A DNA stretch of 64,000 nucleotides from Saccostrea echinata (Eukaryota). The notes under the pieces are model-generated. The model was not told where the DNA came from. It saw nothing but the letters and a program-made list of their open reading frames with translations, and made no database searches. Both the position numbers and the translations under genes were made by a program. The stretch lies in the NCBI RefSeq assembly GCF_033153115.1, contig NW_026889774.1:19344001-19408000 (forward strand). Reading direction: 5' to 3'. Position 1 is the first letter of the stretch. Every line of letters starts with the position of its first letter. Of the stretch, positions 51,793 to 54,700 are shown one piece after another.

Positions 51793-54700
51793 TTTATCCG
51801 GATGGTAATTTTATAATTGGTCTTTCAACTCTGCTCACATCTCTTCAGCTGGGTGTTAATTTTTGTAAAAACAGCTCAGTGACCGGGCTGTTTGTTTTTA
51901 AAAGACGATCACCTGTGACCTAGTAGCTGTTGTCAATGACTTGCTACAAGGTTATTTAGCCTATAGGTTGATAGGTATGCACCAGACTCGTGTTCTGGAT
52001 ACTCATTGGTTTGGGAAAATAATTTTACATCCATGTATCAGTAACTTATTTATAATCAGCAAACTAACTTATCGGCAAATATAATCTATCATTAGGTAAA
52101 ATGCTGACTGATGTTTTTCATGCTAATTGTTAGGCCATTATTTACACACTGAAATTTCTACGGATTTTTCCATTTACCTGATCATGACAAGGAGCACACG
52201 GTGTGACCGGTCGACAGGGGATGCTTACTCCTCCATGGCACCTAATGTAAATCGTACCAATTTTGATGCACCAGATGGGCATTTCAACAAATTATGTCTC
52301 TTCAGAGATGCTCATGCTGAAACGTTGCAAATTTGAAATATTTGAATAACAAAATCTTTGAAGAGTTTAAAAAAGGGGTGCCAAAGACTGGAGCCAAATA
52401 TGTTGAAGGATCAGAGCTATGCATGAAGGAGATAATCCTTAATTTTGAAATAAATTTCTGAATTTTATCACAGCAATTAAATAGATATCTGTATTTTCAA
52501 GCTAGTACCAAAGTACCTAGCTACTGGGCTGTAGAGACCCTCGGGGATGAACAGTCCACCAGCAGAGGCCTCGACCCAGGGTTCATAATGAAAATCTTAT
52601 ACGGTACCAATTTTGATGCACCAGATGCCCATTTCAGCAAATGATGTCTCTTCAGTGATGCTCATGCCGAAACGTTGGAAATCTGAAATTATATTTAATA
52701 GAAACTTTGAAGAGCTGAAAAAAGGGTACCAAAGACTTGAGCCAAATACGTTGAAGGATCAGAGCTATGCATGATGGAGATAATCCTTAATATTGAAATA
52801 AATTTCTAAATTTTACCACAGCCTCTGATGTTTTTGGAGGTCAGTGTTTGCTTGGCTCCCAATTTGTATTGTTTAAATGGACTATGAGCTTGAATACTGT
52901 TTGTTATCTTCATATTTCATGTTTCACCTATCTGGGAATCAAAGGGTCTGGATAAATGAGGCTTGACTGTACATGTATCTCAGAATGTGTTTAATTGACT
53001 TGTTAGAGCACTACTTCTCTATATCTGCTGGTTAATGTTATTCTGTATCCTACAATCTGTGTGTAGATTTTGCAAATTTAGTGTAAAGATGCCTGCTGTG
53101 TTTAGATGTACTTCAACTACTTATCTCATGAAATTGTACAAGGTTTCACTGTATGTTCAAATAAGTGGTATTTTTTCAGAAGACAAAGAAATCAAGAGGC
53201 TCGTTAAAGAAGTTGAGGATACACTAGAAACAATTCCTCAGCTGAAGAGTACATTCAGTCTACAGGCAGAAATAGACCTGGCTATACAACCTCTACGCAG
53301 TGAAAATGCACAGCTCAGAAGGTTTGTAACACAGTCAAACCTCGTTATCTTGAACTCAATGGACTGAGCAAAAACTTTGAGATATCCTAGGATTCAGGAC
53401 ATCGAGGGTAAAATACATAAAGAAAAGGTAGTTTGGACTTGACATACCCATGGTTATTGAGATATCAAAGTTCAATGTATTGAAGTTCAACTGTATACCA
53501 GTATACTTAATGAGAATTTCTTAGTTTCTGCCCTGTACAATATTGGCTAAATCACACAACTGAGCCTGCAGAACAAAAGTGTATATCATGTATTGAACTA
53601 ACTTCCAAATTTTATTTCAGCAGTGAGAATTTGAATACCTCATCTTCAAAATGTTTCTTGTAAACTGTTTACAGTAAATGCACTTACAATTTTGCTTCAT
53701 TGTAAATGTAATTTGTTATATCCATTAAGTTCATACTACAGTATCATATTTTAAAGCCAAGGGGAATGAAAATCACTTCACTGTAAGCGTCAATTCATTA
53801 TAAGTGTGTTCATTATAAGTGTGATTTACTGTACATGTATTTTATGTCATTAATCTCTTCTAGAAATGATATCAAATTTTCATGGTATTATGAATGGTTG
53901 CAGGTTAACATGGTGATAATGAATATCTTTCAGGCGACTTCGTTTACTGAGCAAGCAAACAAAAGGAGGAGTTACTCAGCTAACAGATCATAAGATGGAA
54001 GCAAAGAAGATGGAAGGTGTGTACATGTATGAATACCCCCGCCAAGAAAGAAAAATTAATGTAATTAACACAAATACGAGTATGCAAAATATTCTGTGTA
54101 TGAACATGTACTTTTAGTTTTTATCATAACATTATGGATGTAAAAAAAAAAATGGGTAAAAAAAATATACTGTATCTCTATATGTGAAATACACTTTTCT
54201 ATTAAAATATCATTTTGAATGAAAATGTGATAAATCATAATGTCAACAGTTATTTTTAGATATACTTGAACAACTCTATCTTTCACAATGAACGTTGAAT
54301 ACATGTGAAAAGGTTATTGACCAATATTTTAAATGAAACTTTGAAAGAATTGGAGTGTGGTACAATTTTTAGTAGGTTTTTGACCTATGTTTCAAATCAA
54401 ACTTTAAATAATTGAAGTGTGGTGGTATAAATTTGAAAAAGTTTAGGACCAATGTTTTAAATCAATGCTAAAACAATAGTCATAAGTGGGAGTTGGTGTA
54501 AATTAGTAAAGGTGTTTGACCAATGTTTCAAATCAGACTTAAAATAATTTATTCAGACAGAATAGTGATATTTGATCTGAAATAAATGATTAATTTATTT
54601 CTGATAGTTATGTTTGTATTCATGTTTTTTTTTTAGACTCTCTGTTACAAAGCAAATTAACAGCTTTACAGAAGGAACTTGTGGCAGAAAAAGAAATGAA

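What the first reader, a model, noticed from the sequence alone, without database searches (positions are those of the whole stretch)
52245..52822. Retrozyme-like repeat whose two hammerheads have mutually complementary, non-palindromic stem III
Seen: two type I hammerhead cores (CUGAAGA...GAAA...UC) exactly 350 nt apart on the minus strand. Their stem III segments are A-UGGGCA-U and A-UGCCCA-U. Neither is a palindrome, but together they form a perfect 8-bp duplex. Known: minimal hammerheads of Penelope elements and metazoan non-LTR retrozymes have short palindromic stem III, can cleave as dimers, and give small circular RNAs. Inference: each copy is one transversion from palindromic UGCGCA and the two changes compensate, as a heterodimeric double hammerhead releasing a 350-nt monomer (52274-52623) would require. 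Caveat: both stems II close with G-U rather than G-C, copy 2 has an A-C mismatch in stem II and copy 1 a U-U in stem I, so activity may be weak and the complementarity may be chance.
Basis: partly seen in the sequence, partly recalled or inferred. Interest (0 to 1): 0.8.

Follow-up and report, generated by a model that had tools for sequence, protein, structure and literature searches.

The report
Decayed two-hammerhead oyster retrozyme copy
This is one worn copy of a small self-cleaving-ribozyme jumping element (a retrozyme) that has about 1,300 ribozyme copies in this oyster genome, and the neat match between its two mutated ribozyme loops is what chance predicts, not a new two-part ribozyme.

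Summary
Two minimal type I hammerhead motifs lie 350 nt apart on the minus strand. Their loop-3 hexamers, UGGGCA and UGCCCA, are exact complements.

They belong to a 578-nt insertion (52244-52821) made of two direct repeats around a 112-nt spacer. The hammerhead family has about 1,300 copies in this 923-Mb genome, a rock oyster according to an earlier scan note. Copies share a fixed 3' end and have variable 5' truncation. This fits the known metazoan non-LTR retrozyme class.

- GG (6 copies) and CC (11 copies) are rare, and they pair only at this locus.
- Among 97 adjacent pairs, 37 carry a mutated loop and only this one is complementary. Shuffling predicts 1.03.
- UG/CA pairs, the commonest complementary type expected, number zero.
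- Both changes are C-to-G at the same CpG, on opposite strands.
- Both repeats show neutral-looking decay of about 10%, and stems I and II are damaged.
- The double-hammerhead fold lies 8.3 kcal/mol above the minimum free energy fold.

Expression could not be shown. The scan has noted this family before on other DNA of this genome.

The parts
52244..52821 (-). Whole retrozyme insertion, 578 nt, about 1.6 units of a 349-nt repeat.
   Evidence: It is homologous to the reference element in L013. Contigs and genomic paralogues of the flanking host repeat join 52243 directly to 52822, with 7 host bases in place of the insertion.
52587..52821 (-). 5' direct repeat (DR1), which carries hammerhead A.
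   Evidence: Direct repeats with 348-350 nt spacing and 91-92% identity. DR1-DR2 identity is 91.4%. The repeat is 9.6% diverged from the family majority.
52475..52586 (-). Central non-repeated spacer of the unit, 112 nt.
   Evidence: It lies between the two repeats and is homologous to the central region of L013 and other copies.
52244..52474 (-). 3' direct repeat (DR2), which carries hammerhead B and ends at the family's fixed 3' terminus.
   Evidence: In 28 of 38 independent loci the homology ends 66-71 nt after the CTGA of the last hammerhead. The repeat is 11% diverged from the majority and has a 7-nt deletion near its end.
52618..52661 (-). Hammerhead A (type I). Predicted cleavage is between 52624 and 52623. 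Stem II has an A-C mismatch and a G-U closing pair.
   Evidence: No Rfam hit.
52626..52631 (-). Loop 3 of hammerhead A, UGGGCA. The consensus is UGCGCA, so the change is C to G at 52629.
   Evidence: Family contigs read the consensus letter at 52629.
52268..52311 (-). Hammerhead B (type I). Predicted cleavage is between 52274 and 52273. It has a U-U mismatch at the base of stem I and a G-U closing pair in stem II.
   Evidence: No Rfam hit.
52276..52281 (-). Loop 3 of hammerhead B, UGCCCA. The consensus is UGCGCA, so the change is G to C at 52278.
52068..52243 (.). Left part of an unrelated high-copy host repeat of about 285 nt, into which the retrozyme inserted.
   Evidence: 5,119 first-look candidates in the genome, with the best copies about 90% identical. 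Depth in the laid contigs runs to thousands.
52822..52923 (.). Right part of the same host repeat.
   Evidence: In paralogues it is contiguous with the left part apart from 7 bases, GATCCCG or GATCCCA.

Best explanation
The locus is an old, inactive genomic copy of a non-autonomous, non-LTR (Penelope-type) retrozyme of a rock oyster.

The element has a 5' repeat, a spacer and a 3' repeat, about 1.6 units of a 349-nt sequence. Each repeat carries a type I hammerhead whose family consensus has a 2-bp helix III capped by the palindromic tetraloop GCGC.

Inferred life cycle, taken from the literature on the class: a transcript is cut at both hammerheads, either singly or as a double hammerhead formed through the palindromic loop. 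The roughly 349-nt monomer is circularised by a host ligase. It is then copied back into DNA by a Penelope-like element's reverse transcriptase, which starts at a fixed internal site. That would explain the constant 3' end and the variable 5' truncation.

The window copy landed inside another repeat and has since decayed neutrally. The GG and CC loops are two independent C-to-G transversions at the same methylation-prone CpG, one on each strand. That they complement each other is coincidence.
For: Family size and consensus:
- 1,302 matches to the hammerhead pattern in the genome, against 2 for the reversed control. The consensus is a perfect hammerhead with a UGCGCA loop.
- Intact copies hit Rfam RF00163 over the full model at 32.1 bits, E 4.9e-6.

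Architecture and retrotransposition signature:
- Two repeats of 221 nt around a 128-nt spacer in L013, and the same layout in the window.
- 28 of 38 independent loci end 66-71 nt after the last hammerhead's CTGA, while 5' extents range from 12 to 643 nt.
- The insertion is precise and sits in a high-copy host repeat.

Decay:
- The two repeats are 9.6% and 11% from the family majority. 31 differences are private to one repeat, 4 are shared, and 3 columns differ in both repeats but differently.
- The hammerheads are not spared.

Chance complementarity:
- GG occurs 6 times and CC 11 times. No other GG+CC pair exists.
- Of 97 unbiased pairs, 37 carry a mutated loop and 1 is complementary. Shuffling predicts 1.03, with P(>=1) = 0.67. 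UG/CA pairs number 0.

Energetics:
- The double-hammerhead fold of the window pair is -20.3 kcal/mol against a minimum free energy of -28.6.
- The intact L013 pair gives -30.3 against -33.0, and its minimum free energy structure is itself a double hammerhead.

Literature on the class: PMC7229834, PMC4209133, PMC11167929 and bioRxiv 10.64898/2026.07.22.740005.
Against: - The specific GG/CC combination is rare a priori. About 0.02 such pairs are expected among 97, so the coincidence is striking if only that combination is counted.
- No target-site duplication is present at this locus. There is a 7-bp target deletion instead.
- No autonomous Penelope-like partner carrying this hammerhead was found.
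- Transcription, cleavage and circles were not shown. The runs returned are of unknown type and kept as contigs.
- The 349-350-nt monomers do not fold better than shuffled sequence, with z-scores of -0.26 and -0.38.
Confidence: 0.86

Rival explanations
1. Functional heterodimeric double hammerhead. The two loop changes are compensatory and maintained, so that only the tandem transcript cleaves and this locus releases a 350-nt monomer or circle.
For: The heteroduplex is a perfect 8 bp at -11.3 kcal/mol, slightly better than the consensus self-duplex at -10.5. The homodimers fail at -2.1 and -0.9. The double-hammerhead fold is far better for the heterodimer (-20.3) than for either homodimer (-5.9 and -12.9). 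The specific GG/CC pair is expected only about 0.02 times.
Against: - It is the only instance in the genome. Other GG copies are solo and other CC copies have non-complementary neighbours.
- Complementary pairs as a class are not enriched, and UG/CA pairs number 0.
- 36 of 37 pairs with a mutated loop are non-complementary.
- The conserved G10.1-C11.1 pair is lost in both copies, and there is an A-C mismatch in stem II and a U-U mismatch in stem I.
- The double-hammerhead fold lies 8.3 kcal/mol above the minimum free energy.
- Neither copy is reported by Rfam.
- No progeny carry this locus's signature, GTT plus CC.
- The hammerhead strand is opposite to that of the neighbouring CCDC14-like ORF.
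- The invertebrate-type 2-bp helix III is reported to cleave as a monomer (PMC7229834), which would make loop 3 neutral.
Confidence: 0.04
2. The GG/CC arrangement was inherited from a dimeric source element or RNA in which the loops co-evolved, so selection acted in the source lineage rather than at this locus.
For: The two repeats of this element are more alike (91.4%, rank 19 of 102) than is typical for the family (median 83.5%). Both share the C11.1-to-U change.
Against: No other insertion in 923 Mb has GG followed by CC. The other GG copies are only 80-88% identical to each other, lie in different flanks, and do not carry the window copy's other changes. 31 private differences against 4 shared ones point to changes after insertion.
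Confidence: 0.05
3. The motifs are chance look-alikes and not hammerhead-derived at all.
For: Rfam reports no hammerhead in the window, even at E<=10.
Against: The genome holds 1,302 family copies against 2 in the reversed control. Intact sister copies match RF00163 end to end at E 4.9e-6. The complete catalytic core is present in both window copies.
Confidence: 0.01

Closest known systems
Metazoan non-LTR retrozymes (Cervera and de la Pena 2020, PMC7229834; for example the Mytilus galloprovincialis repeats of about 350-390 bp)
   Same: Type I hammerhead inside a short, AT-rich, non-coding repeat of about 350 nt. Hundreds to thousands of dispersed copies, present as monomers, dimers or multimers. 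A mollusc host. Penelope-like elements are present in the same genome.
   Different: Most full copies here have a defined 1.6-unit form (repeat, spacer, repeat) rather than long tandem arrays. Circular RNA and self-cleavage were not shown. The monomer is not predicted to be unusually self-paired. This locus has a 7-bp target deletion rather than a duplication.
Dimeric ('double') hammerheads of newt satellite 2, avocado sunblotch viroid and Penelope-like element minimal hammerheads (Forster et al. 1988, cited within PMC4209133; Cervera and de la Pena 2014, PMC4209133)
   Same: Short helix III with a palindromic loop, so that two copies in one transcript can form an extended intermolecular helix III. 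The intact oyster pair is predicted to fold this way.
   Different: Known cases use one self-complementary sequence. The window pair would be a heterodimer of two non-palindromic loops, but it is a single decayed instance with no evidence of selection.
Pseudo-LTRs of Penelope-like elements, with internal initiation of reverse transcription (PMC11167929; PMC8557442)
   Same: A partial tandem gives direct repeats that carry a hammerhead. The 3' terminus is fixed a few tens of bases from the ribozyme. Copies are 5'-truncated.
   Different: No reverse transcriptase or GIY-YIG ORF lies between the repeats. No autonomous element sharing this hammerhead was found here.
Plant LTR retrozymes (Cervera et al. 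2016, PMC4918200)
   Same: Two direct repeats, each with a hammerhead, flank a non-coding core. They are thought to spread through circular RNA.
   Different: The plant elements have type III hammerheads, true LTRs with primer binding site and polypurine tract, 4-bp target-site duplications, and are mobilised by Gypsy elements. None of these applies here.

Membership tests
Hammerhead ribozyme, type I (Rfam RF00163) | Conserved catalytic core: C3-U4-G5-A6-N7-G8-A9, G12-A13-A14, the A15.1-U16.1 pair and H17. | tested here: met
   Both window copies carry CUGAAGA, GAAA, A...U and C17.
Hammerhead ribozyme, type I (Rfam RF00163) | Three helices with helix I open, and a G10.1-C11.1 closing pair on helix II. 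| tested here: inconclusive
   The topology is type I. Both copies have a G-U pair at 10.1/11.1. One has an A-C mismatch in helix II and the other a U-U mismatch at 1.1/2.1. The family consensus has all pairs intact.
Hammerhead ribozyme, type I (Rfam RF00163) | Covariance-model score at or above the gathering threshold of 34 bits. | tested here: not met
   The window copies give no hit, even at E<=10. Intact sister copies in L013 score 32.1 bits, E 4.9e-6, over the full-length model.
Hammerhead ribozyme, type I (Rfam RF00163) | Site-specific self-cleavage. | not testable with these tools
   This needs in vitro transcription and cleavage assays.
Metazoan non-LTR retrozyme | Type I hammerhead within a short (about 170-400 bp) non-coding, low-GC repeat, present as a dimer or multimer. 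| tested here: met
   The unit is 349-350 nt and the window holds 1.6 units. GC is 34-39%. No ORF of 90 aa or more lies within it.
Metazoan non-LTR retrozyme | Many dispersed genomic copies with signs of retrotransposition. | tested here: met
   About 1,300 hammerheads on many contigs. The 3' end is fixed in 28 of 38 loci and 5' extents range from 12 to 643 nt. The insertion into a host repeat is precise.
Metazoan non-LTR retrozyme | Target-site duplication, when present. | tested here: not met
   At this locus, 7 host bases (GATCCCG or GATCCCA) are missing and nothing is duplicated.
Metazoan non-LTR retrozyme | Expressed as linear and circular RNA of unit length. | tested here: inconclusive
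   No run on record as RNA holds the locus. The contigs laid come from runs of unknown type. One 376-nt high-depth contig has a go-back joint and fits a tandem or circular unit of about 346 nt, but it could be DNA.
Metazoan non-LTR retrozyme | Highly self-paired monomer RNA. | tested here: not met
   The z-scores are -0.26 for the L013 monomer and -0.38 for the window monomer, against shuffles.
Metazoan non-LTR retrozyme | Autonomous Penelope-like elements co-exist in the genome and serve as the source or mobiliser. | tested here: inconclusive
   GIY-YIG matches are abundant: 150 were scored, all 150 rows's table are marked over the cut-off, and 1,175 candidates were found, often as inverted pairs. 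None was linked to this hammerhead. Two leads proved to be a LINE inserted into a retrozyme and two separate insertions.
Dimeric (double) hammerhead | Short helix III whose loop is self-complementary (palindromic). | tested here: not met
   The family consensus UGCGCA is palindromic. The window loops UGGGCA and UGCCCA are not, and the homodimers give only -2.1 and -0.9 kcal/mol.
Dimeric (double) hammerhead | Two copies in one transcript can form an extended helix III, with helix I formed in trans. | tested here: inconclusive
   The heteroduplex is a perfect 8 bp at -11.3 kcal/mol. The full double-hammerhead fold is -20.3 against a minimum free energy of -28.6 for the window pair, compared with -30.3 against -33.0 for intact copies.

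The most novel reading that the evidence does not exclude
The window locus encodes a natural obligate heterodimeric double hammerhead. Two non-palindromic loop-3 sequences could form helix III only with each other, so cleavage would be restricted to the tandem transcript and a 350-nt RNA would be released.
Probability: 0.04. Interest if true: 0.6.

Novelty: new member of a known kind. Interest (0 to 1): 0.15.

Why it matters
As it stands, this matters little. It is a routine decayed copy of a known class of ribozyme-bearing retroelement.

Two points are useful. First, the genome-wide table shows that loop-3 complementarity between neighbouring hammerheads is not maintained in genomic copies. 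That warns against reading compensation into single repeat pairs, because the same mutation at a palindromic CpG on opposite strands automatically gives complementary variants. Second, the work documents a roughly 1,300-copy retrozyme family in a rock oyster, with a defined repeat-spacer-repeat form and a fixed 3' end. That could help the study of how Penelope-type machinery copies such RNAs.

Had the heterodimer been real, it would have been the first natural two-sequence double hammerhead.

Tried and rejected
- Rfam at gathering and at E<=10 on the window gave no hammerhead. Only intact sister copies are recognised.
- Expression. The run search returned five small contig-only runs of unknown type. 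Laying them showed family contigs with consensus letters and empty-site joints, but no starts, ends or proof of RNA.
- Search for the autonomous partner, which failed on every lead:
  - L134, with two hammerheads 3,184 nt apart, is a retrozyme split by a LINE (RVT_1 plus zf-RVT) with roughly 14 bases duplicated. It is not a Penelope-like element.
  - L005 is a 94-nt retrozyme 3' fragment inside another element's reverse-transcriptase ORF.
  - L145 is two separate insertions.
- Monomer folding gave no significant structure.
- A GG subfamily was rejected. The five other GG copies are independent, 80-88% alike and lie in different flanks. Three apparent CC pairs of loci are 99% duplicates.
- A fuzzy-regex scan timed out and was replaced by Hamming scanning.
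The results only repeat one search's sequences.

Full report
**1. What is in the sequence**

On the minus strand there are two 32-nt motifs that start 350 nt apart. One is CTGAAGAGACATCATTTGCTGAAATGGGCATC at 52655..52624. The other is CTGAAGAGACATAATTTGTTGAAATGCCCATC at 52305..52274. Each has the complete hammerhead core: CUGAAGA, GAAA, A15.1...U16.1 and C17. Each is arranged as type I, in the order helix I 5' strand, core, helix II hairpin, GAAA, short helix III, cleavage site, helix I 3' strand.

The pattern occurs twice in the window against 0.01 expected. Both copies have G10.1-U11.1. The 52655 copy has an A-C mismatch in helix II. The 52305 copy has a U-U mismatch at 1.1/2.1. AUGGGCAU and AUGCCCAU form a perfect 8-bp duplex.

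Rfam does not report either copy, at gathering score or at E<=10.

**2. The element**

Direct repeats of 86-105 nt segments, at 91-92% identity and 348-350 nt spacing, show that the two hammerheads sit in two copies of one repeat.

A pattern search of the window's own assembly (923 Mb, 425 contigs) finds 1,302 hammerheads of this family, against 2 for the reversed control. I did not verify that.

The overwhelmingly commonest sequence is CTGAAGAGACATAATTTGTCGAAATGCGCATC followed by TGGTGCATC. This is a flawless type I hammerhead with:
- a 6-bp helix I;
- a 4-bp helix II closed by G10.1-C11.1;
- a 2-bp helix III capped by the palindromic tetraloop GCGC.

Intact copies in L013 match Rfam Hammerhead_1 over the whole model at 32.1 bits, E 4.9e-6, just under the 34-bit gathering score.

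In L013 the element is a 221-nt repeat, a 128-nt spacer and a second 221-nt repeat. The window has the same plan. In 38 independent loci, homology ends 66-71 nt after the CTGA of the last hammerhead in 28 cases, while the 5' extent varies from 12 to 643 nt. A fixed 3' end with variable 5' truncation is the signature of target-primed reverse transcription.

The window copy is bounded exactly. Contigs of public runs, and nine genomic paralogues of the flanking sequence, join 52243 to 52822 with only GATCCCG or GATCCCA in between. The retrozyme is therefore 52244-52821 (578 nt). It is inserted into an unrelated repeat of about 285 nt that has 5,119 first-look candidates in the genome. The insertion is accompanied by loss of 7 target bases, not by a duplication.

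**3. Comparison with what is known**

Metazoan non-LTR retrozymes are short AT-rich repeats with type I hammerheads. They occur as dimers to multimers in many copies and are expressed as circular RNAs. The mussel elements are about 350-390 bp (PMC7229834). The short helix III with a palindromic loop, and the idea that tandem copies cleave as dimers, are described in PMC4209133.

A recent preprint derives animal retrozymes from the pseudo-LTRs of Penelope-like elements. Internal initiation of reverse transcription near the hammerhead explains fixed termini (PMC11167929).

The oyster family fits this class. I found no paper describing it in oysters. Other notes of this scan have already flagged sister copies elsewhere in this genome and reached the same classification.

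**4. Test of the heterodimer idea**

- With an intact core, the GG loop occurs 6 times and the CC loop 11 times in the genome. Three CC loci are 99% duplicates of others.
- The other five GG copies are 5'-truncated fragments with a single hammerhead. The other CC copies with a neighbour have CG (four independent loci), UG or AG beside them.
- There are 113 adjacent pairs with both GAAAUG..CAUC boxes intact. I fetched the listed ones and tabulated both loops.

In the unbiased set of 97 pairs:

| Pair type | Count |
|---|---|
| CG/CG | 60 |
| At least one mutated loop | 37 |
| Complementary, among those 37 | 1 (the window) |

Shuffling partners predicts 1.03 complementary non-palindromic pairs, with P(>=1) = 0.67. 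UG/CA pairs should be the commonest complementary type, because UG and CA are the CpG-decay products. There are none, whereas UG/UG occurs twice and CA/CA once. So complementarity of neighbouring loops is not maintained in this family.

The specific GG/CC combination is rare (0.02 expected), and I state that plainly. It is, however, one of three strand-symmetric classes. C-to-G at the CpG cytosine gives GG when it happens on one strand and CC when it happens on the other. So two hits of the same mutation type are complementary half of the time.

**5. State of this copy**

Against the majority consensus of 204 repeats, the window's DR1 and DR2 differ by 9.6% and 11%. The family median is 12.4%. 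There are 31 differences private to one repeat, 4 shared ones, and 3 columns where both repeats differ from the majority but not in the same way. That is what independent decay after insertion looks like. The hammerhead segments carry their share of changes, including loss of the highly conserved C11.1 in both copies.

Energetically, the canonical double-hammerhead fold of the two intact L013 motifs is -30.3 kcal/mol. The minimum free energy structure (-33.0) is an extension of that same fold. For the window pair the values are -20.3 against -28.6, so other folds win by 8.3 kcal/mol. The homodimers are much worse, at -5.9 and -12.9. The complementarity therefore does rescue helix III on paper, but the ribozymes are otherwise degraded.

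No other copy carries this locus's signature of GTT plus CC, so the locus has left no detectable progeny. A 110-aa ORF 213 nt away on the plus strand matches CCDC14 at E 4e-14, so the hammerheads lie on the strand opposite to it. I did not establish the gene's structure or whether the insertion is intronic.

**6. Expression**

No run on record as RNA holds the locus. The five runs offered are small, of unknown type and kept as contigs. Laid at 80% likeness, they show family contigs bearing consensus letters, for example at 52629. One 376-nt, high-depth contig has a go-back joint, as expected for a tandem or circular unit of about 346 nt. Neither strand, ends nor RNA origin can be inferred from these data. 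The predicted monomers do not fold better than shuffled sequence.

**7. Partner element**

GIY-YIG endonuclease matches typical of Penelope-like elements are abundant, but I could not link one to this hammerhead. Three leads failed. One was a LINE inserted into a retrozyme. One was a retrozyme fragment inside another element's reverse-transcriptase ORF. One was two separate insertions.

**8. Verdict**

The heterodimer reading is not supported. I put about 0.86 on chance complementarity in a dead retrozyme copy. I put about 0.04 on a functional heterodimer and about 0.05 on inheritance from a co-evolved source. Interest is low. The element is a new member of a known kind.

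Noticed in passing
window 52068-52243 and 52822-52923: An unrelated repeat of about 285 nt hosts the retrozyme. It has 5,119 first-look candidates in the genome, and the best copies are about 90% identical. Its class (SINE, MITE or other) was not determined.
   Followed up: partly
window 53035-53367 (+): A 110-aa ORF matches Pfam CCDC14 (E 4e-14). 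A CCDC14-like gene probably runs on the plus strand here, which would place the retrozyme antisense to it, in an intron or upstream. The 355-aa ORF at 49846-50913 (+) has no Pfam match.
   Followed up: partly
window 54307-54549: A tandem array of about 3.7 units with a 65-nt period, 70% matching, in a stretch with 27-29% GC and strong positive GC skew.
   Followed up: no
L134 (G000:C1:10276000-10285999), minus strand: A retrozyme copy is split in its spacer by a 2.8-kb LINE fragment (RVT_1 plus zf-RVT, with frameshifts). About 14 retrozyme bases are duplicated at the two junctions, which looks like a target-site duplication.
   Followed up: yes
L005 1476-1569 (G000:C1:8873117-8876148): A 94-nt 3' fragment of the retrozyme, with an intact hammerhead core, follows directly on a 344-aa open frame with a weak RVT_1 match (E 0.0002, below the Pfam cut-off). 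It is probably an insertion inside another retroelement's reverse-transcriptase ORF; the reading frame downstream of the fragment was not searched.
   Followed up: partly
run X2, a 376-nt contig laid on window 52370-52689: A high-depth contig (276x against about 5x for its neighbours) has a go-back joint. Its length equals one unit of about 346 nt plus k-1, as expected from a tandem or circular template of the retrozyme family. The run type is unknown.
   Followed up: no
genome-wide: GIY-YIG matches often occur as inverted pairs 1-5 kb apart, the head-to-head insertion structure described for Penelope-like and Naiad elements. There are 1,175 candidates.
   Followed up: no
L036/L039, L041/L044, L042/L045, L106/L130: These pairs of 2-kb loci lie on different contigs and are 99% identical, flanks included (for example C33 against C55). 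They are probably uncollapsed haplotigs or recent segmental duplications in the assembly.
   Followed up: partly
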